A stretch of 64,000 nucleotides of DNA from Tubulanus polymorphus (Eukaryota > Animalia > Nemertea), in the NCBI RefSeq assembly GCF_964204645.1, contig NC_134036.1:2170001-2234000 (forward strand), given 5' to 3'. The stretch's first letter is position 1. The number at the start of each line of letters is the position of its first letter. The notes under the pieces were generated by a model, which did no database searches, was not told the origin of the DNA, and saw nothing but the letters and a program-made list of their open reading frames with translations. The translations under genes were made by a program, and so were the position numbers. Positions 1 to 62,200 of this stretch are shown here, in pieces.

Positions 1-3000
1 TGATTTAAGATAAACTGAATTAATGAAGAAATTAAATCGATTTAACATTAAATCCTATTTGTGAAACTGGGCCCTGGAGTCAAAACTGGAAGGCCTATCT
101 TATGAGAGAAGCTCCTATATTTACTTAGGTGATCGAGGCGTTTGCTAAAAGTTACGGAAACAGCTTTGAGTCAAGTCAAAACTGGTAGCTCGATATAGCT
201 CAGGACAGAAATGACTCCAACGCGTGTAAAGCCAGTTAGAGCTTCTCTGATTGGCTAAATTTGTTTTGTTGGTATCACAATACCTCAGATGCAAAGAAAA
301 CTACCAGGCGAAATTATCTCAGGCGAAATGAGAGCCAACCATTTGCACTGTCAGATACAGCTCAAGGCCTGGAAACGAATGTTGTAAGACTAAAGTAGAT
401 GTTACAAAAGTAGTCAAAGGTTAAGAATCTCTTCGGGCGAATGAATCATATTTTCTTCATAAGCACGTTACGTTTCACTTTTCCGATTTAACTCTTAAAA
501 CAGGATTAATTCTCACTGTTGAACCGAGGCGGACAGTCGAGATTTAGAGAATGTTGCCATCGGCGACAGACTTTTCACTTTAATAAAAGGAAATGAGAGA
601 ATAACTCTTACTGTTGAATCGGACTAGGATTGTCACCACGAGCAACTGATAATAAACCATAATGTTGCTGCGTGTTGTTTCCGAAGACAGAAAAAAAAAC
701 CGGCAGCGGTCGGGTTGAATTCCACATCAGCAGACGATCCCCGGGGTCCGTACCCTGGATGCCAGACACAAATACCGGAAATGTCAGCGAAAACCGGAAA
801 GCAAGAAAACAAATTGAGAACAGTGGGAAAGATTAGAACCCTGGAAGTAAAACCGGATCGCTATGTTTCTGAAGTTAGTTAATCCCGGAGTAATATAACC
901 CGCTACTGCTGGATAATCGTCACCGTTACTTATTCACGAATGTTGCTAGAAATAAAATCCCCAGGGAGACGAGTTATCTGATATATCCGATACCGTTAAA
1001 ACGATATCTCATTGTTTATAACGATGTAAAGTTGATATTTCTGTATAGTGAATTATTCAATATGTGGTCGACTATCAATACTAGCCGTCTCTTAGCTGTC
1101 CATTATCGGCAACCATTATTAGGCTGGTTAGTAGTCCACTTGCTCTGTCCACACGAGTCCCGGGTTCGAATCTCAATCAAGCGGTCATTTTTTTTTCAAT
1201 TTAAGGATTTTATTTTGTTTAAATAAAGGATAAATTCAAAATATTATTGCGCTTATTGTTATTCTATTCACGTCGTTTTTGCTACGAGACGAAGTAATGC
1301 AACAATACGCTCGACACACGCCGCTGCTACAGCAACCAACGGTCTCCTTAAGCAACAGTCAATAAATAAATTCAAACCTAACGACTTCCCATATTTCCCG
1401 TCATCCATCATTGTGGCTTTGTTTAAAATGGCGGTTTCTAATCTACGGTTCGCTGGGAAGTTTTTGTCGGAACAGGATTCGATTTGAATAGAATTGTTTA
1501 CAATCGGAGAGACTGTACGGAGATTAAAACGGAATCGGGTTGAATGAGGTAGAACCCAAACAGCGGAAGGCAATCGGTTTATTTTACCTGAGCAGATTTT
1601 TTTGAAAAAAAAATGTTCAAGAGTTCAAGCGAGATCACTGGTGGGATTTATACAACCAATACCATCATCGATTTAAAGGAAGTAGGCTATTTTGAAAAAT
1701 GCAAACATTGTCTATCTGATGACGTGTGATATTTATATAACACCTGAACTGCCGAAGCAAGTCAGTTATTCAAACTGGCGAAACATCCAAAAGTTCCACC
1801 AAAATCGTTGATGGCATTTACAGAAATAGCTTCGTACTAATCGTGTGGCAATTTGTACTCGCACAGAATTTTTGGCCATCTCTCCCTCTCTCTCCTTCCC
1901 TCATCTCTCACTCTTCTCATCAATGTAAGCACATGACGGAGTGAATGCCAGTAAATAAACAGCCGAGATCACGTGATGAAGTTTGAAAAGTTCACGCGTT
2001 AAATAAAAAAAAAAGATTCCAGAAACTCCAATTAAAATTCTATTTCACGAACAGCTCTCTCGGTATCTTTTCAAGAGTTGACGTTCGAATATTATCTTTT
2101 TAAAAAGATTTAATTAGTCAAATCAAGTTGCAAATCCGAGTTGCAATTAGGTTTAAGACAATTAAAGGCAAGTCTAACGGTTTACGACAACTTTCGGAGT
2201 CTAAAACTGCGCCGAAAGACACCATCCCATGCACTGAACACGCGTGCTGTTGTTACTGCGATGACCTGTTGTACTGCCAACAGTTATTGGCATGCAACAC
2301 GACACATTTCACTTCCGGCAATGGGCGACGCTTCCTCCGACCGGAAACACGGTCATAATAGCCGGAAATAGGTCCGGTGTATCAATACGCGTAGAACAGC
2401 GGGCGTTATTAGGCTCGACCAGGAAGTGCAATAGTTTCCTAAGTGGCGTTAGAACAGAGTACTCGCGACTAGCGATCGCAGCGCCGCCCTAGCGACAGTT
2501 TCACTCGACTAGTGAATGCTGGAAAAGGCCGCAGTAGGAAATGGCGACTGCAGCGCCACCATATCGACATGCTAGCTCCACCTATTGAGCACACAATTTT
2601 GTTTTAACTTCAAATTTTTTCGCTAAACTTCTAGTGAATGGGACGAAAATCTCTTCTCGACAATGGGTCGAAAATCGAAAATTTTATTTTGGTCGTTCTT
2701 AAATTCTAGAACAAACTTATGTTAGGTATGATGTTAGGAATAATGTTAGGTTTTTCGGAGAAGGACAATCATCTTCTGGCAATCTCGCCGATTCGATGGA
2801 AAATGGCGTCATTTTTTTCAAAGAATAAAGAAATTTCTTTTCTCTCGAAAAACTGGAATATTATTAGAATAATTATAATTCTACGTCGAAAACGCAATTA
2901 ATTTCTTAATTTCTTTATCGGTTAATTACGAGAGATAATTTCAAAGTTTGCCGGTTTTTACGGGATTCGAACCGCCGGCGTTCTACGAACATTGTTAACC

Positions 3001-6000
3001 GAGGCGTGCTCGTCGTTCACTGTAGTTTAATCATCACTTAGATTAAACTAATGACGTCATCGAGTTGAAAGAACGTTTTTCCCTAGAAATTTCCGGGTTT
3101 TTCTCGGTGCGTATTTCTTCTAAGAAAATAACGTGAGTAAATTTTGAAACTGCGAGAAGTTCTTGAAACGTGCTCATAACCAAGACCAGGACCCCTCGTT
3201 TATAATTAAAAGAATCCCGCCTTGGAAAGGAGAAGACTTCCTACAAGAAAAAACAAGTGTTGCCAACCACACCAGCTGACCAGGAAACGCAATAACTTCT
3301 TGAAACGTGCTCAAAGGCTAAAGAGAAGCTCCTTAGTCGTAAAGCAATCGTTGGCAACCTGGAAATTACAGTACCACTTCACCAGAGCCCCCTAGTGGTC
3401 ACAGTAGGATAAATTCAGTTGAAATTAGTGAATTTCTAATTCATAACCTATCCCCATCAGAAATGGAGTATTTATCAGTAAGTTTTGCATTTTGAGGGCC
3501 TTGATAAGGGCATTATAAGGTAAGGAAAGATTTTCAAAGATTGCCACACTCGTCCAGTTGACCTTTATTTCGACCGTCAAGAAAATAGGTTATTCCTTTA
3601 TCAAAAAAGACAGCTTCCATTTACCGTACGGGTCACCGACATAAAAGTAATCGGACTATTTTTACGAACGTTTATCAACGTAATATCGACGGTGATTCGG
3701 TTTCGTTTTATGGCCGAATCTCGCGCATGAATACACACATCTTTACGACAGACGATGGTCACTCGTCCGGTAAAGTGTCGATATTCCGCTGGGGAAATGG
3801 ATTTTTACGCTCGCGCGAGTCTAGTTCGATGAACCGGTCGCAAGAGGCGAACATCAGAACAAAAAGAAAAAAAACAGAACCAGAAAAAAAACATAAACAG
3901 CAAAGGCTGTTTGTGATGAATTGTCGTGACCAGTTTCGTAAAAAAAAACAACGCAGTATCCGTCCAGGGGCGAATTTAAAGGGGGGTCTCGGGGGTAAGG
4001 ACTTCTTTTACGTACGTTATGACAAAGATCGTTAATTGCTGTTGTAAATTTGACACTCACAAAATTTGCATCTTTTGAGATTAGCATTTCACCAAAAATA
4101 TCCTGGCATTGACTTGTGGCATTTGACCCGGCTCCCTTTCGCCTTCTCCTGAGCCACCCAAGCATTTCAATATAATTCCAAAATCTGACCCTAGCCAAGG
4201 AAAAGTCCAGCATCATGAACATGTTTTAAGAATTAAACCAGTTATAAATTATTCGCAGCAACAGACACCTTGTCTGACTCTTCTCGCCTAAACGACGCAA
4301 CAATGGAGACATTGACATTTCAATCTTCCCATTGATTCTATCTTCAATCCGTAACGAAGCAACGACGTAAACACCAAACGACACTTCCTCCGACAAAACA
4401 TCGAAAACGCTGCCGCTTCTCGAAAACCGATTGCGTTCTACACGGCGTTCGTAGGCGTTAACGTCATTTGAAAACTGCAGGACAACGCTGTCTCCGCCAT
4501 TTGATGCTTAAGTTAGCGTTAACGTCAACGGCAGAGCGTTTTCATCAGCGTTTTTTTTTCTTTATCTTAACGTCGCAGCAACGCTAACGCGGCATAGCCT
4601 CGTCATTAACGCCGATCCTTTATTGCGGGCAGCGGCAACGTCGGAGTATAATTAATACTTTTTTTACGATTGGATAAAAAGATATATTAGCTCCACTCTC
4701 TTGACGACAACGTTGAGTGCGCGACGTCCCGGTAACGTCAACGTCAAACGTATATAACGTAAATCGAATTATTCGTTACAACGTTGGCGTTAGCCGTTTT
4801 AAGTATATTCTCAAGTGCGGGTTCATTTGAAGCGTTTTGACGTCGTCGACGCAGCGCAATAATGAAACGACGCCTGTCACCGTTGGCAAGGTTATAACGG
4901 TTCGTTATGAAGCGTTCAGAGATTGCGATAAAACGTTTGATGCAACAGCGGCGCGTGAATCATCATCGAAATATCAAATGGTAATGATGATGATATTTCA
5001 GATATCTCAAAATGTTTTATATTCGGTATCATTATCGATATTGATATTTCAAAACGGTCGCTTTGAAGTGACGCCGTACTCTGGGACGTGAGGGGAAGAT
5101 AACATGCATTAAAAATGATTTTTTTTTCACAAACATGAGCGATTTGTCGACATGGGATGTTACAGAGGCGGCCATCTTACTAAAGGGTTTCAACTACATC
5201 GATTTGATGATGTCATAGGTTGATTCACGGAGCCAGCCATCTTTTCCATTTTATAAAGGATATCAACTACATATATATCATTTGATGATGTCATATGTGG
5301 ATTCTATGGAGGGTGTGTTATCTGAATTTCATAATTTGTCACACGAATCAGGTAGCCATCTATTCGGTAAGGCGAAGGAACGTGTTGGAACTAAATACCT
5401 CCGATAATCATTTACCCGGTACCAGATAAACCAATACATTAACACGTCCAAATTAATGGCACATGCGCAGTAGGTGCGAAAACTAATCACCGAATCCGGT
5501 GCTGGTGATAATGAGGCAAACACGACCGTTAACGACTGACATTGTTGCCGCACGAATTTGAACCGGTTAACCTCTCGAATAGCCTGGGCCCTCAATCCCT
5601 TGTTCACACACGTTTCCGTGAAATTTGACAAATTTGCTGGGAAAATATTATCAAGAATTTCAGTGAAGATGAAGGATTTGCGAGTGGATTTCCGACCAAA
5701 ATTGCGTTGCGAGGCGTTACGTCCCCGTACCGCCAACAACAAACTTATATAATACCCCAATTTGTTCTCTACCATTCAAACAACCAACCTCGTTAATGGG
5801 TTTTATTGGGTCGGTAACCCGTCTAACGAGACGACACATAGCCGACAACCCGTCCGAGAAAGAACTACAACGATTTCCTTTAATTTGTATCCAATCCGCG
5901 AGTCGACCTCCTAGAGCAGTTCGGATCGATATTAGCGTTCTCCGTTATCATTCATAGAGCATAAAGACACGTCAGCTGCGAGATGCGTCGCATTTTCTCA

Positions 6001-7340
6001 GAGCAACGGCCGAAAAAAAAGCGAGCACATTTTTTTACGATTCCGAGATTCCGAGCACATAAACAGTTATACAACCGCACTACGAGCCGTTCGTGTCCCT
6101 AACGACCGTTTTTGAATAATAACGAATTCCTTTATTGATATAAATGTATCGGAATCCGGGCCGCTCCCTCGGCGGTGTCGGGGAGTCGTTAACGCGACGC
6201 GCGTCAAAATGGACGCTTTCAATCAAATCAAATTAACTCAAATATAAAACGTTCATTCTTATTATATCACAATCGACGTTAACGTTCAACATCGATCAAT
6301 CAACGCTTCGAAACGACGTTGATGATGATGATGGAAGAAGGACGAACGCTTACGTACGTTATACGTTTTTACGTTAGCGGCGACGTTTCGATCCGACGTA
6401 ATGAACGACGTGTTGGAACTAGCTAGCTGACGGCAACGTCGGAATATCGAGTGTATCGGAATCAACGTCTATAATAACGCTTTCGATTGTTGTATTTGAC
6501 GTAGACAGCGTAACTAAGAAACAGGATCAGAAACCGGGCAATGAGGACGCTAGAAATGTAGCGTTTTGAAAATTTTAAAAGTATCCCCTCCCGACTCCTA
6601 CGCGGATCGTGGACATTTCTCTGGAAAGAAAATTCCATATTCAATCCGATCATCGCATTGTCCGGGCATTGTTTCCGTTGACATGGTAACGACACGGCGT
6701 AAAAACATCCGGGACATTTCCGTTTTTCTCGACGCGGTCGTCGAAAGCGGAAGAGAATATCAGCTCCTAGAATCTATTCATAAAAACGCAGGCCGTGATG
6801 GATCGGCGACATTTCGCTTCGAAAACTGGCTGTATTTAGACAAGGTGTCAAAAAGGCCGATAGCGCTAGGTGTCGACAATCTTCGAAGACCGATTTTAGG
6901 TTTCAAGTATTACCATCTCGGATATATGCCATTTACAAAAAAAAATATACCATTCTTCCGATTTAAGATCATCCATTATTTTGCTAACACCCCACGGTAT
7001 CGAACAAGACTATCAAAATATCGCATTAAATATCAATGTTTCCTGGACTATCAAAATGTCGCTTTAAGTATCAAAATGTTGCCCGAACTATCATGGATTA
7101 TTCAAACCGCGCAGCAAATTATCTAAAACTTTACGACGCATTAAATTATTGAATTTCAAATGGGTTTTAATGGCAATTTGAACACAATGATCTATCGCTG
7201 TAACGGGGCATTGTATATCACAATATCAATGAAATATTTACACCCCAGACTTAGACGGGATGTCTGGCAGACTGTACTATTATGTCTGTGTCAATGATGG
7301 GTTTTTTTTCCCAAAACGTACATGCACCAAAAAATGATTC

Positions 7341-7445
7341 ATAAACACTAACTAGAAGCCGGCCTTGTTGGATTTATAAACACTAACTAGCAGCCGGCCT
7401 TGTTGGATTTATAAACACTAACTAGCAGCCGGCCTTGTTGGATTT
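7341..7445. repeat. 35-bp tandem repeat x3
   Basis: ATAAACACTAACTAGCAGCCGGCCTTGTTGGATTT. Confidence 0.9.
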
Positions 7446-7567
7446 TGTCGCTAGTATTAATCACTGAAGGTTGGATAAAAATAGGAGTGGACGAATAGAA
7501 GAAATTGGGCTTAATCTAAAAAAAAAGAAATTGGGCTTACTCAAAAAAAGAAATTGGGCTTACTCAT

Positions 7568-7571
<4 letters not shown>

Positions 7572-7643
<72 letters not shown>

Positions 7644-7686
7644 AGGGAGGGAGGGAGGGAGGGAGGGAGGGAGGGAGGGAGGGAGG

Positions 7687-7756
<70 letters not shown>

Positions 7757-7760
7757 GGGA
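7572..7760. repeat. Compound microsatellite (GA)n-(GGGA)n-(GA)n
   Basis: Directly visible. Confidence 0.97.
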
Positions 7761-8141
7761 GTTATTGTTCTTTGATTAAACAGGCAGCAATAATACGATT
7801 AGGATTAGGAGCGTATGGTGGAAAATGCGCCGTGATGTTGTTGCGGTCAGAATCGAGGAAAAAGCCAAGGCTTGCGACAGAGAGCGGAGAGAGAGAGAGC
7901 GGAGGGGTATTAGTCGTGGTAATTACGTTACATGCGCCGAGGTCCTGACACCCACGACGTATAGCAGCGGTGAGCTGATCCGTTAAACGTGAGGTCATTT
8001 CCATGTGTGTGAACGATCAAACCGTTACATCTACAACCTAAGAGTACCCAACCACATTGAGACAGAAGCACAGGAGGAAGGCATGGCAGATAGGCAGTTT
8101 AGGTAACCTAAGAGTACCCGAAGAGATGGAGACAGAAGCGC

Positions 8142-8431
8142 AGGTTTCATCTAAAACCAAAGAATGGCCAGCCACGAGGGCGGCATGGCAGATAGGTTTT
8201 ATCTAAAACCTATTGAGGCTACAGCAGCGATCCCAACGGCCTGGACAACTGATGCCGAGAGACTTTTAATTCGACTCCAAACGACCTAGATCACTGATTT
8301 CCATATAGGTTTTCGAAAGGTTTCATCTAAAACCAAAGAATGGTCAGCCACGAGGGCGGCATGGCAGAAAGGTTTTATCTAAAACCTATTGAGGCTAGAG
8401 CAGCGATCCAAACGGCCTGGATAACTGATTT
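8142..8431. repeat. Local direct duplication (about 110 bp)
   Basis: AGGTTTCATCTAAAACCAAAGAATGGxCAGCCACGAGGGCGGCATGGCAGA... at about 8142 and about 8318. Confidence 0.85.
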
Positions 8432-9728
8432 CCATATCGATACAAATTTCGACTTTCAAACACTTTAAGATTGACAGACGAACTCTTAGCTTTGACTTAA
8501 ATCATGGCTACGTCGAAACAGAAATCACGACCTACAAGCGCTCTTATTGTGCTTGTGACCTAACCGAAATCCCTAACCGAGTATCTCTTAGTTTCACTCT
8601 AAACTCGTATCTGGAACTCTGCGGCCACTTTTGGTGATTACATAACAGGCCGTCATCTTTATCGAACTACCAGAAGAACCACCAGAAGATGTGAAAAATT
8701 ACTACAAAATTTCGAAGTCGATTTTTCTTTTTCGTTGCGTGGAAAATGTTTAATAATCGTAGTCGTTGAAATTTCAGAAATTCCGTTGCGAACGTTGCCC
8801 GAAGCGACCGGTATCGGATTGTCGACAACCAGAACGAACGTGCCCTCCGACATCCGAAGAGTTGGGTGAGAAAATTGGAAAATGCTCGAACGCGTGAAAA
8901 ACATCAGCGGCGACGAGAATTCAGCCGATAACTCGATTGCGATGCAAATACGATGGGACTGATTGACTGAATGGGTTTAAAGGCCACGTTTTGAAGTTTC
9001 TGAAATCTGCACAAAAAAATCAGGGCGATCAAATGTTTTACATTCGTAACAACATCACCGATAGAGGGCACTGCTCCCAGTTATTAATGACACATTTCAT
9101 ATTCTCGCTGTGGAAACAAACGGTTGAAATGTAAATTAACTCCCAATTCATGAAAGAAAATTCTGTTAACCAAAACTTTCTAACTTGAGTTCCGATATTT
9201 TATGGGTCGCTATAGCTTTGACGGGCCGCGGCAAGAACCCGCTGTCCTCATCTGAAGAACCCCATGGTGCTCAATGGAAGAACCCAAAGATAAGACATAT
9301 GGTATGATAAGGTCAAATAGATACAATTTACAAGACCCAGACCTATACAGAGCTGAATATTTTTCATCAAATCGCTTTGAAAGAAGTTAATCAGATCTTT
9401 ATCGACACCAGCTGCAGATGGCTCTATATTTTCGAAGATACCCGTCATATTAATATCGTCAAATTTCTCAAATGAATCAATCATAAAATCGAACGATATC
9501 AGAATTATTTTATGATATTTTGCACGATATATCAGGTGCAAAATGAAGCCGATATTAAAGAAAGTAAACGGACGTAATAATCCGGGATTTATATTTATGA
9601 TTATGATATGCGTACTAACAATGCGCACAGACCGACAGGATCTCATATTCTCAAGAGTAACCCACACAGAACTGAACGTCTTTCGGCGAAAGAAGATAAA
9701 TTCATCAGTAAGTACACTTTTACGTACA

Positions 9729-9858
9729 GGGCTGCAGTTGCTGAAAGGTTGGTTAGAGTTAACCAGCGGACAGTTGACATAGTGACAATTAAAAGTTCAT
9801 TGTTACTATGGTATTTATCCGCTGGTTATCTTTAAACAACTTTCGAGCAACTGGGTCC
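9729..9858. mobile_element. About 130-bp MITE-like element
   Basis: Imperfect TIRs GG..CAGTTGCTGAAAGGTTG / CAACTTTCGAGCAACTGGGTCC; a diverged reverse-orientation copy lies at about 50174-50287. Confidence 0.6.
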
Positions 9859-9992
9859 TGCTTTTCAATTAACCAATCGTTAAATCGGCCTGGAGTAAGA
9901 TGAGGAAAATACGTTTGGTGTTTAAAAAAAACAAATAATTTTCGAGATATTTTCGACCTGAATTATTTCCGAGGTATTCATTTTCACAGACG

Positions 9993-10286: not shown

Positions 10287-10498
10287 CGGCCATCTTAGAT
10301 ACGGTACCGTTTAACATTCAATAGCCGTAACAATGAAGATTATATCGAGATACAAGATGGCCGCCTTGACGATTCCATCTATGACGTCACCATCCAGTAA
10401 TAGTTACTTCGTTGATGATAACGATAGCAAATGACGGTAACTATGGTACCCGATGACGTCATAATAAGAAACGTGAAGGCAGCCATTTCCCCCTTCAA

Positions 10499-10504
10499 AA
10501 TAAA
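10499..10504 (+). promoter_or_regulatory. Putative polyadenylation signal of the nested peptide gene
   Basis: AATAAA about 210 nt after the stop codon, followed by T/GT-rich sequence (GTGCTTTTCCTTTCTGTCATTTT). Confidence 0.45.
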
Positions 10505-10606
10505 TGTAGCAAACGAAAATGTGCTTTTCCTTTCTGTCATTTTGATTGGCTGAAAAATGGTTTTGTATTTTCATTTTTTTTGGGGTCTAAATATTTTACT
10601 ACTTAC

Positions 10607-48493: not shown

Positions 48494-48496
48494 CTG

Positions 48497-51600: not shown

Positions 51601-53704
51601 CGAAAATTCAAACTAAGCCGTTGAATGGCTAAACTCTTTCACGAAAAAAGTGGAACTTACTTCATGTCATTTTGAGACGTTTATTTTTTTGAATATTCCT
51701 TTATTCTTCTCAAAATTGTAAATTTTGTCAGTCGAACGCCACTCTAAATTATAGGATCTACTCTTGCAAAAAGATCGACGCAGAATTTCTACTTGTTGGG
51801 GCAGAATTGTTATCGTAGCTTGCATAACATCTCATTTTCAAAAATAATAATCAACATTATAAGGAAATTAATTAAACTTCAAAATCCGTCAAGATCGGTA
51901 TCAGTGACGCGCCCACGCATCGTCTGCGTGCGTTTCTGCAATCAGCGGAGAACGTGTGGGTTACTGACGGAGTAGAATTAATCCCAGCGGTTTTTCATTT
52001 CGAAAACGGATGCGCAGCCGATAAGTTTCACCGATAAACAAGCAAACAGGTGTGGGGTCGAATAATCCAATTCTATACCTTAGATTTTACCAATATCAAT
52101 ATTTACAACAAGAAGGTATCCGAATATCCCTTCCAATGTCCTGCGCGGTTCAACCATATTCTACATAAGATCTCATCGAGTATCCTTTTTGCATGAGCTA
52201 CACCTAAAATCCCACCATAAACAGCAAAAAGGTGTCCCCTCCACCCCTTCCAATGTCTTATTTGGTAAAACAATATTCTACGCAAGATTTCACCAAAAAA
52301 AGAATTTACATTAAGAAGATATTCGAATATCCCTTCTTATGTCCTATTTGGTAAAACAATATTCTATCACTAAGATTTTATCAGGCACAGTATTTTACAG
52401 CGAAAATGTGTTGAAAATGTCCCCTTACTAAATGCTACAGCATGATTTTACCTACAATATTATGTCCTATTTTGGTAAAACAATATTCTAGATTCCATCA
52501 GTCACAATATTTACCAACGAAAAGGTTCTCAAATATCCCATCCAATTCCTTTTTGGTAAAACAATATACTATACTATACTATATATAGATTTTATCAGGC
52601 GCATTATTTATCACCGAAAAAGTGTTGAAATATCCCCTTTCTATCGTTCTATGTGCTACAACTAAAGATGTAACCGAAGCCGGAACAACTCCCAACAAAA
52701 TGTCAAGGGTTATTCGAGACGATGCTTAAACGAATATCTGACATTTAGATCGCGTAAACAAACATCCTTTACAGTAAAAAGTTTAAGGCGTTTTAAGAGG
52801 TATTTGATTCCTATCCAGGGTCCCAGGGGGAGGGTAAGTAGCCTGCATTGTTTAGGGATTTTGATTCCGTTCATAATCCTCGTCAAATATACTGAGACAG
52901 CCAAGCACCGCCAGGGACCAAACTCTAAAATTCTCGGGATTCTTCTGAATTTTTCCAAATCGGATTCGTGACAAATAATTTTTTGTTTTGGGTAGAAAGC
53001 ATTCCGAGGGCGGGAGAGCAGGAAATGTGAAAACAAGAACTTAGGCTTATTCGTGACGCTAGGTTCAGTTTCGACAAGGCCCCTTTAGTTTTAGGTCGAT
53101 GAGTTTAATTCAAGCAGGGCCCTATCTACCTGACAAAGTTCGTGAAGAAACCAGATGAGGTTCGTGAAGAATGTTTTTCAACAGAGCATATGAACGATTA
53201 AGTGGTAGGTAAATAAATTATTTTTAATTTGTTGATTTTTGCTCTTCATTTTTTGCGTTAGGTTTTATAGAGATTAAATCTATTTAAAGCTACAAACATT
53301 GCCACGAACTGAACGAACAGAGATGAAACTCGCAATCTCATGATATTAGGTTTAATATCGACGGAATAGAAAACTAAAAGGCCACGGGTCGCATTCGAAC
53401 CGCAATCGGCGCGAGCGCGGACATTTTATCGGCTTGCAAATAAATTGAATATTGTGACAAGCGAACAAGAGACCGGAGAAATAATTGCCGACGCGATAGT
53501 AAACTTAATCACGACGACGAACACGTCGACAGCAATCTGAAAGATTAACAGTGCGACGCTAGTGATGCGGTCATCAGACGAGCAAACAGAACTCGGCGAC
53601 AACTGAGAGACAGCAGCAGACGATTTGAGGGTGGCGGGATATAGATAGAGAGGGAGAGATGGTAAATATACTGGATTCATTTATAAGGTATGGTCTCTCG
53701 CTGT

Positions 53705-54583
53705 CAATCAGGGGACAGTTAACAAGAGGCTATTCCTGACAATAAGGAGACAGTCATCCATTTTCAGAGACTGTTCCTGACAATCAGGGGACAGTTAACA
53801 AGAGGCTATTCCTGACAATAAGGAGACAGTCATCCATTTTCAGAGACTGTTCCTGACAATCAGGGGACAGTTAACAAGAGGCTATTCCTGACAATAAGGA
53901 GACAGTCATCCATTTTCAGAGACTGTTCCTGACAATCAGGGGACAGTTAACAAGAGGCTATTCCTGACAATAAGGAGACAGTCAGCCATTTTCAGAGACT
54001 GTTCCTGACAATCAGGGGACAGTTAACAAGAGGCTATTCCTGACAATAAGGAGACAGTCATCCATTTTCAGAGACTGTTCCTGACAATCAGGGGACAGTA
54101 AACCAGCGGCTATTCCTGACAATAAGGAGACAGTCATCCATTTTCAGAGACTGTTCCTGACAATCAGGGGACAGTAAACCAGCGGCTATTCCTGACAATA
54201 AGGAGACAGTCATCCATTTTCAGAGACTGTTCCTGACAATCGGCGGACAATAAACCATATTCTGAGACTGTTCCTGCCAATCAGGGGACAGTTAACCATT
54301 TTCAGAGACTGTTCCTGACAATCAGGGGACAGTCATCCATTTTCAGAGACTGTTCCTGGCAGGGAGGGTACAGTTAACCCCTATCAACCATTTCAGAGAC
54401 TATTCCTGCCAATCAGGGGACAGTTAACCATTTTCAGAGACTGTTCCTGCCAACAAGGGGACAGTCATTCTTTGCAGAGGCTGTTCCTGGCAGGGAGGGT
54501 ACAGTAAACCCCTATCAACCATTTCAGAGACTGTTCCTGACAATCGGGGGACAGTAAACCATATTCTGAGACTGTTCCTGCCA
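53705..54583. repeat. 76-bp higher-order tandem repeat (35+41 bp subunits) grading into about 40-bp monomers
   Basis: About 7 copies of CAATCAGGGGACAGTTAACAAGAGGCTATTCCTGA + CAATAAGGAGACAGTCATCCATTTTCAGAGACTGTTCCTGA, followed by diverged monomers. Confidence 0.92.
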
Positions 54584-56048
54584 ACTGCAATCCATATTAA
54601 TAGTTGTCGGAAGTAAGAGCCCCTCGCACACATCTGAGCCCTACGGACACCAAATCGCACACATTAAGCTCATTAAACCAAGGCCACAGAACAGCTTAAG
54701 AAACTGTAGACTCAGAGATGGGGTTGGGTTTAAATTGCTTTCTAAGATGCTAGGCGACCTACTCAACTAACTAAGCTCATTAACAGATTACTCAACGCTT
54801 TTTCTGGGAATTATCTTCAACGCTTCGTGCTATTCAGATTTTCTTTTTCTCAAGTTTGTTTTTAAAATCCACCTGCAACTCAAGGACTTCAAAACCTGAC
54901 GAGAAAGTGTAACACAAACTGCGACGCGCTGTAAAGACGATCCTTCAGAGATTCATGACAAAATTTTAACTCAAATTTTTGTTTTAATTGCTATTATGTT
55001 TATTCCATGTTTTCAATGAGGACAACAATTCAAACTCAACCGTTTTAAGATAAAACCTTTTCTCTATCAGACTGATATCTGATATCTCAAATAATTGTGG
55101 TCGTTTTCAATCACAACCACAAAGTTATCGATAGTTAAAATTGATATGAAAAATATACTGATATTTGAAAATGAACAAGAAATAAATTCTGATTTTGAAA
55201 GGATTTTAACATTTTTCGGGGAAGAGGAATAACTACCATTGTTACAGTTAAATTAGTTACTTCATATTAAAAAGTATTTACGTTTCAAACGAACTCAAAG
55301 AAATCATTCTGATTTTGTAGAATATTTTGACAATTTGGAAGAAGTCGAGCTCCTACAAGGTGTGAACAATACTCATTGGCAGACACAAGTCTGGAATACG
55401 AAACGATTCGATGTTTGCCACTTTTTTTTACGACCGCCGAAAATAGTTCTACCGCGCATTGATTTATGCTCGGGCACAAATTACCGGCAAAAATCCGATT
55501 GAAAAATTAGACGTAGACGCGAAAATAGTGATTTCCCCCGCGAATCGACCGCAGTTAACGCCGAATATATATATGTATATATATTCCAGGACGTTTCGCC
55601 TTCGGATTAGGGTTATTGTCGAGAATGGGAAAAAAACGCGAAATCGATCGAATTCTTGCTGAAACGATGACGGTTGCGTATTGATAAACGTTATCAGCGA
55701 ATTATGTATATATTTGTCGACGTTTCGCCGATCTCGGATTAGGTTTTTTTTGTTGACGAACAATGAAAAACCGGAATCGATACGGCTCTGGCTGAAACAT
55801 CGACAGTATCATTATGGTTATATCTTCAAGAAATGACAACGCGGCTTAAACGGCGGACTTGGTTATCGATTTTTTTTCGTTTCCTCTTGTCGTCCAATAA
55901 AGAAATTGTTCTTTCGGTGAATGTCCTCTGTCGGGAAATAAGACGCTGAACATTTTTTCGCTGCGTCGAAAACCAGTTCGTTGACCGGAAAAATCCATCG
56001 TAAGACATCATGAAATAGATGTGTTGGTACATACACTACTAAAAGAGA

Positions 56049-56415
56049 TAGCTGCCTCCATTAATCCACCTATGACATCAACAATAATTGACACAGTGAG
56101 ATACGCTTCCAGGAAAGATGGTTTCCGCCATAAATCCACCTATGACATCATCAATAATGTATGTAGTAAGATATGCTTCCAGGAAAGATGGCTTCCGCCA
56201 TAAATCCACCTATGACATCATCAATAATTGATGTAGTAAGATATGCTTAACTGAAAATATGGCTGCCAACATAAATCCACCTATGACGTCATCAAAATAA
56301 AGCATGAATATGATTGACTTATGAAGCAACTGTTAAATGGTCTTTCTAAAGGATATGGTGTAAACGGCATCGATTCGATGACGTCATTGGGGGAGTAATG
56401 GAAGCAGCCATGTTT
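56049..56415. repeat. About 71-bp tandem repeat x3.5 plus an inverted unit (same dispersed family)
   Basis: ATAAATCCACCTATGACATCATCAATAAT..GTAAGATATGCTTCCAGGAAAGATGGCTTCCGCC; inverted unit GATGACGTCATTGGGGGAG..GGAAGCAGCCATGTTT at about 56377-56415. Confidence 0.8.
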
Positions 56416-59111
56416 CCTTCCTCGAAGGATCTGTAACGATGACAACTAAAAAAAAACAAGGCAGTCATTTACGGAACTGCCCGTAAATCAAGTTGTTAAA
56501 GAGATGACCAGGTGACCAGTGGTCAACAGTGTTATCTTATTACGGTTGATGGATGGGTGGAAGGTTACCGACGGCGCTGGTCAACGACTGGTCAACTAAC
56601 GGTCAACGTCAATCGGTCGATACGGATCGATTTAGTAATGAAATATTCAAACACGGTTTCTCAGCTGACAGACGAAACACTTACGGAATAATCAATCGAA
56701 AACTGATGATAACGAATTATTCAACGTCATTTTCGCGCGTAACAATCGCCACCGTTGCAGCTGCGTGGATACCGGTATATCTGGTAATATCTGGATTAGG
56801 CGGATCACGGGAGGCACGCGCGGACTGCAGGAAGCTGTTGACCTGTTTAAACGTGAGGTCGCTTCACAGTCGTCCGTTTGAGGTTGGCGAGAACCAGAAT
56901 GAAATAATCAAGTCACGTCGAGGAAACATCTAAAACTAATAACTAATAGAAACAACTTAAATCATATGAAAAAAAGATTCGATAATATTCCGGGAAGTCG
57001 GGATTCGAGGTAAAACCGAAATGGGAAATGTCAAACTCTTTTACAAAAACACTAAGAAGCTAAACACAAAATGGGAAATTCCAACATCTTCCATGAAAAC
57101 AAACCTCATAAGGATTTTGTAACAACAAGATGTTTTACCATCAATGATGAAATAAGCCTAATGGGCGAATTGTGGATGATTTTGGGAAATGCCGTACAAA
57201 ATCTAGCCACGTGAAAACGGTGGTAGCAAGCGGTGGTAACACATTAGACTGTTACATTGATGACTCCAAGAATATGCTTTGATCAATGGTAACATAAGAC
57301 CAATTGCTCGCTGGGCGAATTTTGGGTCAGTTGAGAAATGCCGTAAAAAAATCCAGGCACGTCAAAACAGTGGCAGAAACAGATGTTACTGACAAACTTG
57401 GTGAATTGGAAAGACAACCTCGGTTAAGTCTCCCAGTTCACTGAACAGTCCAGATACGAATTGTCACACGACACACCGACCTTAAAGACAATCTCGGAGT
57501 CGAGAACGATGATCCGTTATCGTTACCGAACGGGATCCATATTGATTATTTCTGCCATCACACGGCGCAAGTCAATTATTTATCAACACAACCGAAAACA
57601 ACACGTCGATTCGTCTGCTGGAATTATTTACGGGGGTGATCGTCTGCCAGTCCGTCCGTCCGTTTGTTGATTAGAGGTAGTTGATGAACTGCGCGCTACC
57701 AAACGAGATGACCGTTTTGGGACGCGGACAGACGATAGACTATATCGGCGAGTGTTATATGTATAATTTGATGGTCGATTGGACCAGCAGACGAGATGGG
57801 TCTGATCAGATCTGAACGACAGACGAGACTGCTTGGGTCTGATCCCAACAGCAGACGAGACTGGATTAACGATTGAGCCAACACCAGATGGCGTAACTGC
57901 CAGTAGCAAAACTACCTAACACCAGATGGCTTAGCTACCGATAGTGAACTAAGCCAACGCCAGATGGCATAACTGTCGGTATTAAAAACAGCCAACACTA
58001 GATGGTGTAACTGCTGTAAGTGGACGCTAGCGAAAAGTATCCTGCATCCTATATACTCTGCAACTGCAGCAGGAGTGCACCACATCACTGGGGCCCAGCA
58101 GAAGTGTCTCACAGCCCGGGGGCTCCCATCCTGCAGATACTAATCAACAGACGATTGCATGAAATGAGAGAGATGGTGGTGAAATGAGATCGAGATCTCA
58201 CATTCTCAGTTGCTAGCTATTTGTTTACAATCCATTAACGTTAATTCGATATAGCTAATCTACCGTATAGTTCGTAAACACACCTGCAGGCGGCGACACT
58301 CCCCCATTGTTGACACGCGAGAGTAATATCGAGCATAGACTAATTTCAATCCCCCAAAGGCAGGTCACCACCTGGGATGAGTCATGCACTTATAGACATT
58401 TCATAGGTTAAATCCATGCTAACCAACAAGTCTGAAGGGGCATCAAAATAACCACATGCAAGTCATGCCTGTATTATAAAGACGGTACTTTCTAAGCCTA
58501 ATGTATTTCAGGCCAGATGTTCATTAGCAAACAAGATATTGTCATTTCATTAAACGATCAAATATCATTCCTATTATCGTGTAACCATCTAACACAATTA
58601 GATTCATAAAGATTGCAAGAAGAGCAAAAGTCATATTTAGATTCTAGACGAGGGGGGCCGTTTATGGAAAAGCGTCCAGTCATGGGATACAGGAAGGAAC
58701 AAATATGGAATTACTAATAGAACTAGTTCAACCTTTTCCTGAAACTGGTCCAAGGTCGTATTCGAGCCTGTCGTTGTTTATTTCAAATTCTTAAAATCGC
58801 CAAGGCAACTCGTTTCTATAACGGAGTTGATTATTGTGGGAAGTGATGCGAAGTTGATAACGAGAGATAGATAGAAGTGACGTGTCTGCTGGCAGCAGCA
58901 GCCGACACCAGCTGATAACACTCCCACGCACCCGTTATTACACGCGTTTCCAGTTAAATTACGATCCAATAATCGTAGGTGTTACGATCCAATATATCGT
59001 ACGTGGTCACATAAAATATAGGTTATGAAATTATCTCAAATCGATTTTTCGTTGCCCGTGAGTCTTTTCGAACGATATATCTGATATATCTGATGGCAAG
59101 GGACCATTATG

Positions 59112-59236
59112 AATGAGACGGTCGTCATTAGTAACTAATCATAATTTTACTGAATCGTTGAAGTTATTGAGGATGAGAAGGTAGTCATTAGTAACTAATC
59201 ATAATTTTACTGAATCGTTGAAGTTAACGAGAATGA
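59112..59236 (+). repeat. 60-bp minisatellite family, array 4 (about 2 copies)
   Basis: GTCATTAGTAACTAATCATAATTTTACTGAATCGTTGAAGTTA occurs twice. Confidence 0.88.
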
Positions 59237-62200
59237 GGTGGAAATAGTGAAAGGAATGGTAGAAAAGAGACATATATCGAACTATCAAAAACTCATTATA
59301 TCAAACTGGCAATAAAAGTATTCCATCAGTAACTTTTCATGATATTGACCTCCTCGTCACCAATAGCCTATTGTTCATCAAACACTTACAACAGACAAAA
59401 CAATGTCCATTGTACAAACAGCAATCAAGCCCGACCCTCTCTATCTCCTAAACCCCCACTCCTGGCTCCCATTCTCCCCCTCTCTCCACTCCTCACATCG
59501 CTATCACAAATTCGTCACACGAAATTAATTTATCTCGAAAATATCAAAAATCTCATCCACGAATTATATATAATATCACATCGTCTATATCATTTTCCCT
59601 TGACCGCTTTTGATAGTTGTTTACGCACTGATATGGGTCGCAGACGACCAGACGCATATAGATATAAACAAACGACACTTATCACCGCCAGGTGTAGCTA
59701 GTAGTCATCATGAATTCGGATCACGTAAGCAATTTGTTTTTTGATGATTTTTTTTGGTGCTGATATCGTTATGATTACCGTTATCGGCGCGCGCAGTTCG
59801 GTAACGTCTGTCTAATAGCTAACAGTGTCGTCTGCACGACCAAAGTCTCGTAAAACACGTCTGGTATAATACAAAAAAAGCAATTTACTCCCGGTTTACA
59901 GATAAGTAATGACAGTTTTAACGGCGTAAGAATCTACTATGAATAGTGGCATTTGGTAGTGATTCGGTAAAAGTAGTTTTTTTTCACCCGTTGCGAAATG
60001 AAGGCAGGGTTCATAGCCTCAAGACCAACCAAAATTCAAGGCCATTTGAGAAGCACATTCAAGGCTTTTTACCCCAATGAAAAATATTTTTACGGCAATA
60101 TTTCCTTGTTTCATCCATTCAAAAACAATCAAAACAGCTTTAACAGTGCTGACCCAAATTCACCGATATATACCGATACAACCAACTACAGCAACTTTAA
60201 GAAATTTGATGATTTCTTTTTTGAGGATTTCGTTCGAAACAAGCACCACAGAAAACAAGTCACTTAGAGGTCATGCATCCATGCGCTTTTCGGACTCGAT
60301 TACGTCAGTTATTGGACGACAAACTGATTAACACGACAGATGATAGAATTGTGTAAATCTCTAGATGTGTCTTTAACATCGTTGGCTGAGACAAGAACAT
60401 AAGTATTACTCGATGTGCACAGATCGCATAAAGGTCAAAGCAAGCTTCACGCATGTCGTTTTTAAGATGCTATCAGGCGGTTGTGGTAAAAATTATTCCA
60501 ATAAAGCTAAGTATCTCTAATCCGCTGATATATCCAGATAAAAATGAATAACGATTCCGATAGTAGGGCGATTGGGATCAAAACGGCAGTTAACTCACAA
60601 CCAGAATCACCACGACTGAAGTGTTTACCAATGTAGGGGTAATCAACGATTCCAAAAACAATTCAGTCATATAGACACACTGGCATTCCATACCAGAAAG
60701 CTGGACATACAGAAACGTTTAGGCTATAGTTATTATATTTGGAAACGTTTAGGCTGTAGTTACTATAAGCTATAAGCCACAATCGCCACTACTAAAGTGT
60801 TTACCAATGCATGGGTAATCAACGATTCCACGAAAAACATTTCATACCAAAAGATGGACTTATCGGAACGTTTAGGCTATAGTGACTCACACCCACAATT
60901 GCAACTGCAAAAGTATTTACCGAGGGGAAAATGACAATTCCCGCAAAACAATCTAGATCTCGATTTGCTGGCCAGTTCATTTCATACGAAATAGGCTGGA
61001 CATTCCGGCTATCAGCAATCAGCAATAATCTCTATAAACGAATCCAGACGGGCATATTCGCTGGTCAATAGTTGGACATACCGCTGACGGCTAAAACCCA
61101 CTGGAGAATTAGCACATAATTGAAGTGTGTTTGTTTGTTACTCGGGGCTAAATTGGGTAACAAGGCACAGAACAGTTAACGGAAATTAACCAGTGATTCC
61201 CGAATCACGAACCGACTGTCAATCAATCTGTTATTATCGACATTTTCGTGCGCGCAAGTTTTTTCCTTTTTTTTCTCTGTTAGATATAATTTCCATTGGG
61301 AAAAGAACGGCAGCAGCGGACGCAGTGACATCAGCGGCTGCGGCGACAGTAGTGACCAGTTCGTACGGTTAGACTTAGCTTCACAACTTGCTTCACTGAC
61401 AAACAAGTGTTGTCTTTACCAGAACCAACCTCCATCATCAAAAATTATTTCATTTCATCTACTGTTTTGCAATCGCGGAGACTTTGTTCCATGAGATGAA
61501 CCCCGCACCCAGACAAGTAAAGATGTATCTGGATTTTATAAATTTAAGTTTATCTAAATATATTTCAATGATTGATATAATGTTATGTAATTTGTGCAAG
61601 TTAATAACAATTCTCATGGACCAAGTTCGACTTTGAATCGGGGTTTAACCCAATCTAGCGAAAGTCGAGTTAATTTAGACCCAGGCCAAAGTAAGAACTG
61701 GTCGATGAAAATCGCACCCTGGAGTTACACTTAAACTGGTATTTAGGTAACTGAACGTTAGAAAGATGAGGTTCCGTTTCATGTGCTGAAAGAAAGAACA
61801 ACACACACGCCATCTAACGGAACAACACGAAAACAATATGGATACGAAACGACATCAACCTCAGAATAGCTCGGACTCCGAGCTCCATTTGAGGTAAATC
61901 GCAACATCATCCTGGGACACTGTGACAGAATTAGGATACATCCAGCACGACGGCAAGGACAAGTTGTAATCTGATAACACGAAGTCAGTGGAACAGGGCG
62001 AATGGGGCCACTATTATTGGGCATTTGCTTTACAATCCATACATCACGGAAATCTATATTGTAAATCCGGAATTATGTTCTTGTGAATCGAAAACACGTA
62101 GCAAATAATTTGAGATAACCATGATTCATCGAAAATCATTCGATGCAAATAATATTCGCTGGGTGGGTGGGTTTAATGGTTTATCTGAAAAAGAGGCATT

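What the first reader, a model, noticed from the sequence alone, without database searches (positions are those of the whole stretch)
730..59835. Octamer GCAGACGA/TCGTCTGC is strongly over-represented across the window in unique flanks
Seen in sequence: at least 37 exact copies by hand count on both strands, starting at 730, 11380, 13178, 13240, 13316, 14265, 17134, 18243, 18959, 19642, 19972, 21256, 23181, 24297, 24345, 27723, 28340, 28362, 28438, 28578, 31518, 34399, 36502, 36567, 39304, 39369, 44649, 45746, 49539, 51920, 53616, 57611, 57640, 57787, 57851, 59640 and 59828. There are also many ACAGACGA/TCAGACGA variants, one overlapping the peptide's start context. A zero-order estimate at about 38% GC gives about 1 copy in 64 kb. 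Flanks are unrelated, so a single transposon does not explain it. It is often extended as AGCAGACGAT, clusters at 13.2, 28.4 and 57.7 kb, and occurs inside GPCR coding sequence (two positions shared by both paralogues). Established: the core resembles the Smad-binding CAGAC, and dispersed short motifs mark chromosome-scale functions elsewhere (Chi, DNA uptake sequences, nematode MEX and pairing-centre motifs). Inference: a genome-wide recognition word for a lineage-specific DNA-binding protein (chromatin architecture, recombination, protection from methylation) or the footprint of a biased mutational or gene-conversion process.
Basis: partly seen in the sequence, partly recalled or inferred. 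Interest (0 to 1): 0.8.

Follow-up and report, generated by a model that had tools for sequence, protein, structure and literature searches.

The report
Locus-restricted octamer over a receptor gene
The eight-letter word GCAGACGA really is about 16 times too frequent here, but only in a roughly 320-kb stretch of unique DNA that matches the region of alternative first exons of one ribbon-worm receptor guanylyl cyclase gene, so it looks like a dense local array of protein-binding sites and not a genome-wide signal.

Summary
The window has 38 exact copies against about 1 expected. Flanks are unique, and 126 of the 138 copies in the 264 kb I hold lie in repeat-masked unique DNA.

The genome-wide reading fails. 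The 268-Mb Tubulanus polymorphus genome has only 9,275 copies, about 2.2 per 64 kb, close to its reversed control.

The excess is regional. It starts sharply at C12:2,087,269 and runs to at least 2.405 Mb, at 0.56 copies per kb.

This stretch matches the upstream part of one minus-strand natriuretic-peptide-type receptor guanylyl cyclase gene. The gene has a single set of constant exons and five diverged first-exon units at 2.114 to 2.427 Mb. The four first-exon units I hold end in the same-phase donor, which fits the exon-2 acceptor.

One-mismatch variants are barely enriched. Close copies show preferred spacing and orientation.

Best reading (0.45): binding sites for an unknown, highly specific DNA-binding factor, kept by weak selection. 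Function is inferred, not shown.

Weaker enrichments lie on C10, C8 and at C12:1.27-1.32 Mb. The adjacent window was flagged for the same word by this scan (s1-487665).

The parts
1..64000 (.). The whole window lies inside the octamer-rich stretch, C12:2,087,269 to at least 2,405,442. The window is C12:2,170,001-2,234,000.
   Evidence: 138 copies in C12:2.070-2.334 Mb and none in the first 17.3 kb; pair sites reach 2.4054 Mb.
730..737 (+). GCAGACGA copy
10218..10225 (-).
11380..11387 (+). GCAGACGA copy about 70 nt upstream of the start codon of first-exon unit E1b, within the region covered by an RNA-like contig
13178..13323 (.). Cluster of three copies (13178 +, 13240 -, 13316 +), 1.8 kb upstream of E1b
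14265..14272 (+). GCAGACGA copy
17134..19979 (-). Run of five minus-strand copies (17134, 18243, 18959, 19642, 19972)
21256..34406 (+). Run of eleven plus-strand copies (21256, 23181, 24297, 24345, 27723, 28340, 28362, 28438, 28578, 31518, 34399), including the 28.3-28.6 kb cluster
36502..36574 (.). Divergent pair (36502 -, 36567 +) inside the coding sequence of GPCR 1
39304..39376 (.). The same divergent pair (39304 -, 39369 +) inside the coding sequence of GPCR 2, inherited with the gene duplication
44649..53623 (.). Five solitary copies (44649 -, 45746 -, 49539 +, 51920 -, 53616 +)
57611..57858 (.). Cluster of four copies (57611 -, 57640 -, 57787 +, 57851 +)
59640..59835 (.). Convergent pair (59640 +, 59828 -)
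10607..11312 (-). Variable first-exon unit E1b of the receptor guanylyl cyclase: signal peptide plus the N-terminal part of the ANF_receptor ligand-binding domain. The donor A|GTAAGT follows base 10607.
   Evidence: Pfam ANF_receptor, E = 2e-20; donor site; a contig of run X4 ends exactly at 10607, with 27 further letters that do not lie here.
9977..10510 (+). Small, highly expressed peptide gene nested antisense in the receptor's first intron
Evidence: X4 contig over 10038-10510 at depth 221.
36081..37031 (-). Intronless rhodopsin-type GPCR 1 (316 aa), nested in the octamer-rich stretch
38892..39824 (-). Intronless GPCR 2 (310 aa), 78% identical to GPCR 1

Best explanation
GCAGACGA, more fully V-GCAGACGA-B-A, is the recognition site of an unidentified, highly sequence-specific DNA-binding factor. 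A multi-zinc-finger protein is a plausible type.

In this genome the sites are kept at high density, about one per 1.5 kb of unique DNA and in both orientations, over a few chromosomal stretches. The densest stretch is about 320-340 kb on contig C12.

That stretch matches the 'variable' part of a natriuretic-peptide-type receptor guanylyl cyclase gene. This is the region between the single set of constant exons and five diverged alternative first exons. Each first exon encodes its own signal peptide and the N-terminal part of the ligand-binding domain. GPCR genes and a peptide gene are nested in the same region.

Inferred mechanism: the array recruits the factor across the whole variable region. 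This sets a region-wide chromatin or looping state that governs which first-exon promoter, and which nested gene, is used. The logic is comparable to CTCF sites in clustered protocadherins or the coating of olfactory-receptor clusters.

Shown here: the regional excess, the sharp left edge, the exactness of the word, the unique flanks, the short-range arrangement of copies, and the exon layout.

Inferred: that a protein binds the word, that selection maintains the sites, that all first exons splice to exon 2, and the regulatory role.
For: The excess is regional, not genome-wide. There are 9,275 copies in the genome against 138 in 264 kb. There are none in the 17.3 kb that hold the constant exons, P about 7e-5 at the local density.

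Of 167 genome-wide sites where two opposite-strand copies lie within 500 bp, 27 fall in C12:2.0916-2.4054 Mb, which is 0.12% of the genome.

The copies are not repeats. 126 of 138 lie in repeat-masked unique DNA, where the word is the top 8-mer at z = 45. Flanks share nothing. Repeats make up 25% of the stretch and hold almost no copies.

The specificity is very steep. There are 138 exact copies against 7.3 expected. The 24 one-mismatch neighbours sum to 195 against 159 expected, and only position 1 (A or C) and position 8 (G) tolerate change.

Close copies follow an arrangement. Twelve same-strand pairs lie 18-34 bp apart. Nine divergent pairs (TCGTCTGC...GCAGACGA) lie 49-84 bp apart, against one convergent pair. 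Gaps of 100 bp or less number 27 against 7.4 expected.

The sites sit in patches somewhat richer in GC and CpG, beside GCGCGC and GAGAGA runs.

Gene layout: the cyclase domain occurs only at C12:2,071,244-2,072,025, and ANF_receptor profile positions 179-328 occur only at 2.0814-2.0831 Mb. Profile positions 2-135 occur five times on the same strand, at 2.114, 2.181, 2.271, 2.318 and 2.427 Mb. All four units I hold end in a phase-1 donor A|GTAAGTA that fits the exon-2 acceptor, which starts with two bases and gives ...SRVSR-I-IVLCADSES.

E1b appears expressed and spliced at that donor.

Weak hint from another ribbon worm: six NCAGACGA copies on one strand within 6 kb upstream of a Lineus longissimus homologue.
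Against: There is no binding, chromatin or expression evidence for the word itself.

No known factor is matched, and the word turned up in no relevant paper.

Copy density in coding sequence is about the same as in non-coding DNA: about 5 copies in roughly 7.5 kb of coding and UTR sequence, including 4 in the two GPCR coding sequences. That fits a uniform DNA-level force as well as it fits regulation.

Copies do not sit at a fixed place relative to the first exons.

The same word is also enriched 3- to 5-fold over Mb-scale stretches of C10 and C8, and strongly at C12:1.27-1.32 Mb. I could not inspect those places, so the link to this one gene may be partial or coincidental.

The right edge is known only to about +/-20 kb.

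Splicing of the distal first exons to exon 2 is not shown. RefSeq models E1a as a separate 290-aa 'NPR3-like' product that ends in a small intronic exon.

A distant animal with two E1-like exons 73 kb apart shows no such word. The Lineus signal is not significant over the whole locus: 7 against 3.1 expected, and 3 of 100 shuffles reach it.
Confidence: 0.45

Rival explanations
1. It is a chromosome-scale landmark and not a gene-regulatory array. The word marks terminal regions of a few chromosomes (C12:1.3-2.4 Mb, C10:0.4-4.2 Mb, C8:13.6-16.3 Mb) for a process such as homologue pairing, recombination control or nuclear positioning. It would work like nematode pairing-centre motifs. The overlap with the receptor gene is then incidental.
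For: Pair-site clusters outside the main stretch: about 27 sites on C10:0.44-4.2 Mb, about 13 on C8:13.6-16.3 Mb, and 4 at C12:1.27-1.32 Mb. All lie within a few Mb of a contig start or of the highest coordinate seen on that contig. Density is the same in coding and non-coding DNA. Both orientations are used.
Against: The densest stretch is only about 0.33 Mb. Its left edge falls 4.2 kb upstream of exon 2 of one gene. Contig ends were not verified as chromosome ends. The C10 and C8 enrichments are only about 4-fold, a figure inferred from pair counts.
Confidence: 0.15
2. It is a neutral footprint of a regional mutational, repair or conversion bias that creates or preserves this word, with no function.
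For: Density is equal in coding and non-coding DNA. No secondary motif sits at a fixed distance. Other words are also locally enriched: CGTTAACG at 13.7 times genome density and TGACGTCA at 4.8 times.
Against: No known process writes an exact 8-11-bp word into unrelated flanks over 300 kb. One-mismatch neighbours, including the CpG-transition products GCAGATGA (3 against 9.2 expected) and GCAGACAA (5 against 8.0), are not enriched. Young repeats inside the stretch lack the word. Close pairs show a preferred orientation and spacing.
Confidence: 0.12
3. It acts in RNA. The word is read in the giant first-intron transcript by an RNA-binding protein, or by pairing between inverted copies, to help process a pre-mRNA of up to 340 kb.
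For: The stretch matches the shared first intron. There is a strand bias of 85 to 53, so the sense RNA more often carries UCGUCUGC (P = 0.008). Inverted pairs can form 8-14-bp stems.
Against: 38% of copies are in the other orientation. Copies also lie in GPCR coding sequence, in a 5' UTR, and presumably upstream of the most distal promoter. An 8-bp stem is weak, and the fold z-scores only reflect the built-in inverted repeat.
Confidence: 0.08
4. It is a promoter word of many small dispersed transcription units, in the manner of the Ruby motif of C. elegans 21U-RNA clusters.
For: An exact 8-mer on both strands, with unique flanks, concentrated in a few genomic stretches and scattered through introns of unrelated genes.
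Against: No conserved base or composition shift sits at a fixed distance on either side within 60 bp. Density is about 5 times lower than in 21U clusters (from my own knowledge). There are no Rfam hits. No small-RNA data were available.
Confidence: 0.07
5. It is a relic of an old repeat or satellite whose only surviving part is the octamer, or subterminal transposase-binding repeats of dead DNA transposons.
For: Local mini-arrays exist, with seven copies in 220 bp at C12:2,091,559-2,091,789. Several unrelated satellites elsewhere contain the word. The 18-34-bp spacing in clusters recalls subterminal repeats.
Against: Flanks are unrelated beyond +/-2 bases. Decayed variants are not enriched. 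Most copies are solitary.
Confidence: 0.04

Closest known systems
Clustered protocadherin (and UGT1A) loci: variable first exons with a conserved promoter element and CTCF sites
   Same: Several alternative first exons, each with its own start codon and signal peptide, lie upstream of one set of constant exons. A short DNA word recurs across the variable region. CTCF-like sites (CCACCAGATGGCG/A) lie just downstream of one variable exon.
   Different: Here the word is not one per promoter. It occurs about once per 1.8 kb throughout the region, in both orientations and inside nested genes. The variable exon encodes only part of the ligand-binding domain. Splicing to the constant exons and one-promoter-per-cell choice are not shown.
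C. elegans pairing-centre motifs (ZIM/HIM-8 sites) and X-chromosome MEX/rex motifs
   Same: Short exact words, in both orientations, strongly concentrated in particular chromosomal stretches and read by dedicated zinc-finger or condensin-loading proteins.
   Different: Those stretches are Mb-scale and chromosome-specific. The motifs are 12-mers, often in short local repeats. Here the main stretch is 0.33 Mb and fits one gene's architecture. No cytological or binding data exist.
Ruby motif (CTGTTTCA) of C. elegans 21U-RNA clusters
   Same: An exact 8-mer with unique flanks, on both strands, concentrated in a few regions and interspersed in introns of other genes.
   Different: Ruby motifs have a fixed downstream spacer and a small-RNA start. 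No such positional signal exists here.
Smad-binding element / CAGA box (AGCCAGACA)
   Same: Shares the AGAC/CAGAC core.
   Different: Smad MH1 domains read 4-5 bases. Here 8 bases are invariant and 3 more are biased. GCAGAAGA, GCAGATGA and GAAGACGA are not enriched. No GC-rich Mad-type half-site sits at a fixed spacing.
Bacterial domain- or genome-specific words (matS in the Ter macrodomain, Chi, KOPS, DNA uptake sequences)
   Same: Over-representation of an exact short word in unrelated flanks, maintained by weak selection on many sites. matS is restricted to one chromosomal domain.
   Different: Different kingdom and machinery. This is only an analogy of population-genetic logic.

Membership tests
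Dispersed repeat or transposon family | Copies share sequence beyond the core, so a consensus can be built | tested here: not met
   Flank information content is about 0 beyond -1 and +8 to +9. All-against-all comparison of +/-100 bp finds only the GPCR paralogues and one local array. 126 of 138 copies lie in repeat-masked unique DNA.
Dispersed repeat or transposon family | Decayed copies (one-mismatch variants, CpG transitions) accompany intact ones | tested here: not met
   One-mismatch neighbours sum to 195 against 159 expected. GCAGATGA is 3 against 9.2 and GCAGACAA is 5 against 8.0.
Genome-wide recognition word (Chi- or DUS-like) | Over-representation across the whole genome | tested here: not met
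   9,275 copies in 267.8 Mb against 7,882 for the reversed word. That is about 2.2 per 64 kb against 38 in the window.
Ruby-motif-type small-RNA promoter | Regional concentration of an exact 8-mer with unique flanks on both strands | tested here: met
Ruby-motif-type small-RNA promoter | Conserved spacer and initiator at a fixed distance downstream | tested here: not met
   No position with information above 0.1 bit outside -1 to +9 within +/-25 bp. No positional k-mer apart from GCGCGC, GAGAGA and further motif copies within +/-60 bp.
Ruby-motif-type small-RNA promoter | Small RNAs that start at a fixed offset | not testable with these tools
   Only contig-level runs were available.
Protocadherin/UGT1-type variable-exon locus | Several alternative first exons upstream of one set of constant exons, on one strand | tested here: met
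   Five ANF_receptor N-terminal units lie at C12:2.114-2.427 Mb. There is a single copy of profile positions 179-328 and a single cyclase domain at 2.071-2.083 Mb.
Protocadherin/UGT1-type variable-exon locus | Each variable exon splices to the first constant exon | tested here: inconclusive
   The donors share one phase and fit the acceptor. The E1b donor is used in an RNA-like contig. No junction read to exon 2 was seen. RefSeq joins E1a to a small terminal exon instead.
Protocadherin/UGT1-type variable-exon locus | One conserved promoter element per variable exon | tested here: not met
   The octamer is spread at 0.3-0.8 per kb through all intervals and has no fixed position relative to the exons.
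Pairing-centre or chromosome-domain motif | Mb-scale enrichment near one end of particular chromosomes | tested here: inconclusive
   Pair sites cluster on C10:0.44-4.2 Mb, C8:13.6-16.3 Mb and C12:1.27-2.41 Mb.
Smad-binding element | 4-5-bp GTCT/AGAC core suffices; degenerate flanks | tested here: not met
   All eight positions are needed for enrichment. Variants that keep AGAC are not enriched.

The most novel reading that the evidence does not exclude
A ribbon worm has built a protocadherin-like 'choose one ligand-binding head' receptor guanylyl cyclase locus. A dedicated DNA-binding protein coats its 340-kb variable region through about 180 exact GCAGACGA sites to enforce the choice of one first exon per cell. 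This would be an independent invention of locus-wide promoter choice that uses a new word and a new reader protein.
Probability: 0.15. Interest if true: 0.85.

Novelty: new variant of a known kind. Interest (0 to 1): 0.68.

Why it matters
Regionally confined, exact DNA words in unique flanks are rare in animals. Where they have been understood, as with pairing-centre motifs, dosage-compensation sites, piRNA promoter motifs and protocadherin CTCF sites, they revealed dedicated reader proteins and region-wide control.

This case gives a sharply bounded stretch, a very specific 8-11-bp word and a clear gene architecture: one receptor guanylyl cyclase with five alternative ligand-binding first exons and nested GPCR genes.

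That makes the question directly testable: which protein reads the word, and does it govern the choice of first exon. Even if the word proves neutral, its origin would point to an undescribed regional mutational process.

Tried and rejected
1. Genome-wide word: rejected by the whole-genome count.

2. Repeat origin: rejected by flank comparison, repeat masking and neighbour counts.

3. Giant-virus or foreign insert with a promoter word: rejected. Long ORFs are few and GC content matches the host.

4. GPCR-cluster promoter word: rejected. Only two GPCRs plus one weak match lie in 264 kb. Pfam later identified two more rhodopsin-type GPCRs in L020.

5. The stretch as a tandem array of whole receptor genes: rejected. 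There is only one cyclase domain and one copy of the later ligand-binding exons. tblastx self-comparison found only the E1a/E1b pair.

6. Fixed partner motif or Mad/Medea-type composite: none found.

7. Hairpin or miRNA-like precursors at inverted pairs: the stems are only the built-in 8-14 bp. No Rfam family matches.

8. Orientation runs: the runs test over 138 copies is not significant, z = -0.78.

9. 'Every sub-region has its own words': a 30-kb scan of 7,622 8-mers gave few outliers beyond chance. CGTTAACG is nevertheless regionally enriched.

10. Cross-species test: only weak and mixed results. There is a Lineus hint and an unnamed distant animal with no signal. The one protein I searched for relatives with source names (the GPCR) matched only Tubulanus proteins; among the named E1b relatives the only other ribbon worm was the distant Lineus.

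I did not try to get it another way. A look-up of the window's own GPCR gave nothing.

13. Two of the nine fold inputs (L017 and L018) had wrong coordinates and did not contain the word. They are disregarded.

14. Literature: the word appears in no relevant paper. I found no paper on variable-first-exon receptor guanylyl cyclases.

Full report
OBSERVATION

The window holds 38 exact copies of GCAGACGA/TCGTCTGC. Dinucleotide-preserving shuffles give 1.09 +/- 1.06. Markov expectations built from the window are 1.0, 1.2, 1.5, 1.9 and 3.9 for orders 0 to 4. The rise to 17 and 32 at orders 5 and 6 is circular, because nearly all GCAGACG and CAGACGA heptamers are themselves the motif.

Flanks are unrelated. 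Position -1 avoids T: A 65, C 36, G 30, T 7 of 138. Position +8 avoids A, and position +9 prefers A. Nothing else within 25-60 bp carries positional information.

WHERE THE EXCESS IS

The window is contig C12:2,170,001-2,234,000 of a 267.8-Mb ribbon-worm assembly. Source names identify the species as Tubulanus polymorphus.

The whole genome has 9,275 copies, or 0.035 per kb. That is only 1.18 times the reversed word and about twice a zero-order estimate. The word is therefore not a genome-wide signal.

I fetched 100 kb on each side of the window. There are 138 copies in the 264 kb, and none in the first 17.3 kb. The onset is sharp at C12:2,087,269, after which density is 3-14 copies per 10 kb all the way to 2.334 Mb.

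I mapped the rest indirectly by searching the genome for two opposite-strand copies within 500 bp. Of 167 such sites, 27 lie in C12:2.0916-2.4054 Mb. The only others on C12 are at 1.27-1.32 Mb (four sites), 1.98 Mb and 3.2 Mb.

Weaker clusters lie on C10:0.44-4.2 Mb (about 27 sites) and C8:13.6-16.3 Mb (about 13 sites). Pair density scales with the square of copy density, so these correspond to roughly 4-fold enrichment. The main stretch is at 16-fold.

NOT A REPEAT, AND VERY EXACT

Self-comparison plus low-complexity masking removed 25% of the 264 kb. 126 of 138 copies remain in the unmasked part, where the word is the top 8-mer at z = 45.

The masked copies are the four in the two GPCR paralogues, a GA-rich mini-array of seven copies at C12:2,091,559-2,091,789, and two others.

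The 24 one-mismatch neighbours sum to 195 against 159 expected. Only ACAGACGA, CCAGACGA and GCAGACGG are clearly raised. The CpG-transition products are not raised. CpG is not depleted in these sequences, with observed/expected about 1.2.

The picture is an exact word that is being kept or made, not a family that is decaying.

ARRANGEMENT OF COPIES

Copies cluster with each other. Gaps of 100 bp or less number 27 against 7.4 expected.

Close pairs are of two kinds. Twelve are same-strand pairs 18-34 bp apart. Nine are divergent pairs (TCGTCTGC...GCAGACGA) 49-84 bp apart, against one convergent pair.

Sites lie in patches slightly richer in GC and CpG than random unmasked positions. They lie near GCGCGC and GAGAGA runs.

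Overall strand use is 85 plus to 53 minus (P = 0.008). The runs test is not significant.

WHAT THE STRETCH CONTAINS

Few long ORFs exist, so this is ordinary host DNA and not a foreign insert.

Pfam scans and whole-genome family searches gave the following. A guanylate-cyclase domain occurs only at C12:2,071,244-2,072,025 on the minus strand. ANF_receptor profile positions 179-328 occur only at 2,081,427-2,083,050. Profile positions 2-135 occur five times on the same strand, at 2.1135, 2.1806 (window 10607-11312), 2.2708, 2.3178 and 2.4262-2.4271 Mb.

These five units are 28-45% identical to each other. Their nearest other relatives in the genome are only 27% identical, on C9. At least three of them (E1a, E1b, E1c) begin with a methionine and a signal-peptide-like segment.

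All four units that I hold end in a phase-1 donor A|GTAAGTA. The first constant exon starts after ...TTTTCAG with two bases. Any of the units would therefore read ...SRVSR-I-IVLCADSESVREIML, the expected continuation of a natriuretic-peptide receptor.

Contigs of run X4 have a different haplotype and include a 221-fold-deep contig over the nested peptide gene, so the run is probably RNA. They cover E1b and stop exactly at its donor, base 10607, with 27 further letters that do not lie on the stretch.

The most economical model is one receptor guanylyl cyclase gene with five alternative first-exon units spread over about 340 kb. I did not see a junction to exon 2. RefSeq models E1a as a separate 290-aa product that ends in a 20-codon exon 8 kb downstream, at C12:2,105,260-2,105,319.

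Nested in the region are two GPCR pairs, a small highly expressed peptide gene and a reverse-transcriptase ORF.

THE COINCIDENCE

The octamer-rich stretch starts 4.2 kb upstream of exon 2. It avoids the constant exons. It runs through every interval between first-exon units at 0.30-0.76 copies per kb (0.38-0.91 per kb of unmasked DNA). It reaches at least 2.405 Mb, and the fifth unit lies at 2.426-2.427 Mb.

Density in coding and UTR sequence is about the same as in non-coding DNA: about 5 copies in roughly 7.5 kb.

OTHER WORDS

CGTTAACG has 2,617 sites in the genome but 33 in the stretch, which is 13.7-fold. Of these, 27 lie in about 100 kb of it (window coordinates about -76 to +20 kb).

TGACGTCA is 4.8-fold enriched, partly through a small palindromic element.

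A scan of 7,622 8-mers for 30-kb bursts gave few outliers beyond chance. GCAGACGA is the only word that fills the whole stretch.

CROSS-SPECIES EVIDENCE

A profile-free search with E1b found many exon-1-like proteins. The only ribbon-worm relative with usable DNA is a compact Lineus longissimus gene. Six NCAGACGA copies lie on one strand within 6 kb upstream of it. Over the whole 32-kb locus the count is 7 against 3.1 expected, and 3 of 100 shuffles reach it. This is only a hint.

An unnamed distant animal carries two E1-like exons 73 kb apart on one strand. It has one copy of the word in about 42 kb.

INTERPRETATION

An exact word that works in both orientations, sits in unique flanks, shows a preferred short-range arrangement, lacks decayed relatives and is missing from young repeats is best explained as a protein-binding site kept by weak selection on many sites.

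A 16-fold excess of exact copies over near-unchanged neighbours corresponds to a scaled selection coefficient of only about 3. That figure is my own inference.

The fit to the variable region suggests region-wide control of first-exon and nested-gene use. This step is inferred.

The rivals are a chromosome-scale landmark, a regional mutational bias, an RNA element, a small-RNA promoter word and a relic repeat. They are weighed in their own sections.

No paper mentions the word in a relevant context or describes a variable-first-exon receptor guanylyl cyclase.

The same word was flagged by this scan's first stage in the adjacent, overlapping window (s1-487665). My counts in L005-L010 agree with that note.

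Noticed in passing
C12:2,071,244-2,427,090 (window 10607-11312 holds unit E1b; L005:3426-4272, L014:6300-7516, L019:3750-5526 hold E1a, E1c, E1d): A natriuretic-peptide-type receptor guanylyl cyclase appears to have five alternative first-exon units. Each has its own signal peptide and the N-terminal part of the ligand-binding domain. They lie upstream of a single set of constant exons, a protocadherin/UGT1-like layout that I found in no paper.
   Followed up: partly
L005:3111-3122 and L005:3388-3397; window 57876-58014: Near-consensus CTCF-type sites (GCCACCAGATGGCG/A). Two lie within 30-320 bp downstream of the E1a donor. A 38-bp tandem repeat carrying the same core lies beside the 57.7-kb octamer cluster.
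   Followed up: no
window about -76,000 to +20,000 (C12:2.094-2.190 Mb): The palindromic word CGTTAACG (usually ACGTTAACGT) occurs 33 times in the stretch against 2,617 in the genome, which is 13.7-fold. 27 of them lie in this roughly 100-kb part, all in unique DNA.
   Followed up: partly
window 10038-10510: The small peptide gene nested antisense in the receptor intron is covered by a contig of depth 221 in run X4. The neighbouring receptor exon is at about 11. The allele in that run differs by 15 substitutions and a 9-base insertion.
   Followed up: no
L004:5260-5319 (C12:2,105,260-2,105,319): The RefSeq protein XP_074661507.1 (290 aa, 'NPR3-like') joins E1a to a 20-codon terminal exon inside the shared intron. 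This may be a short secreted isoform or an annotation artefact.
   Followed up: partly
L038:10001-11008 and L039:10001-10831 (ENA ERZ26052287, contig ctg78032, 446 kb): An unnamed animal in a public metagenome-style assembly carries two E1-like first exons 73 kb apart on the same strand. Spaced alternative first exons of this receptor may therefore not be unique to Tubulanus.
   Followed up: partly
L036:1307-7153: Upstream of a compact Lineus longissimus NPR-like gene, six copies of NCAGACGA (five TCAGACGA, one GCAGACGA) lie on one strand within 6 kb.
   Followed up: partly
G000:C12:1,268,443-1,315,027; C10:442,668-4,197,742; C8:13,580,710-16,244,129: Further clusters of closely spaced octamer pairs. 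The C12:1.27-1.32 Mb patch has a pair density like the main stretch. I could not read the contents of any of them.
   Followed up: no
L020:3226-4383, L020:6169-7287, L020:8265-9998: A second pair of intronless rhodopsin-type GPCR genes and a reverse-transcriptase ORF lie inside the same stretch.
   Followed up: no
window 41633-41880, 56046-56295 and elsewhere in the stretch: A short palindromic element, CCCTATGACGTCATAGGG, recurs and accounts for part of the TGACGTCA excess.
   Followed up: no
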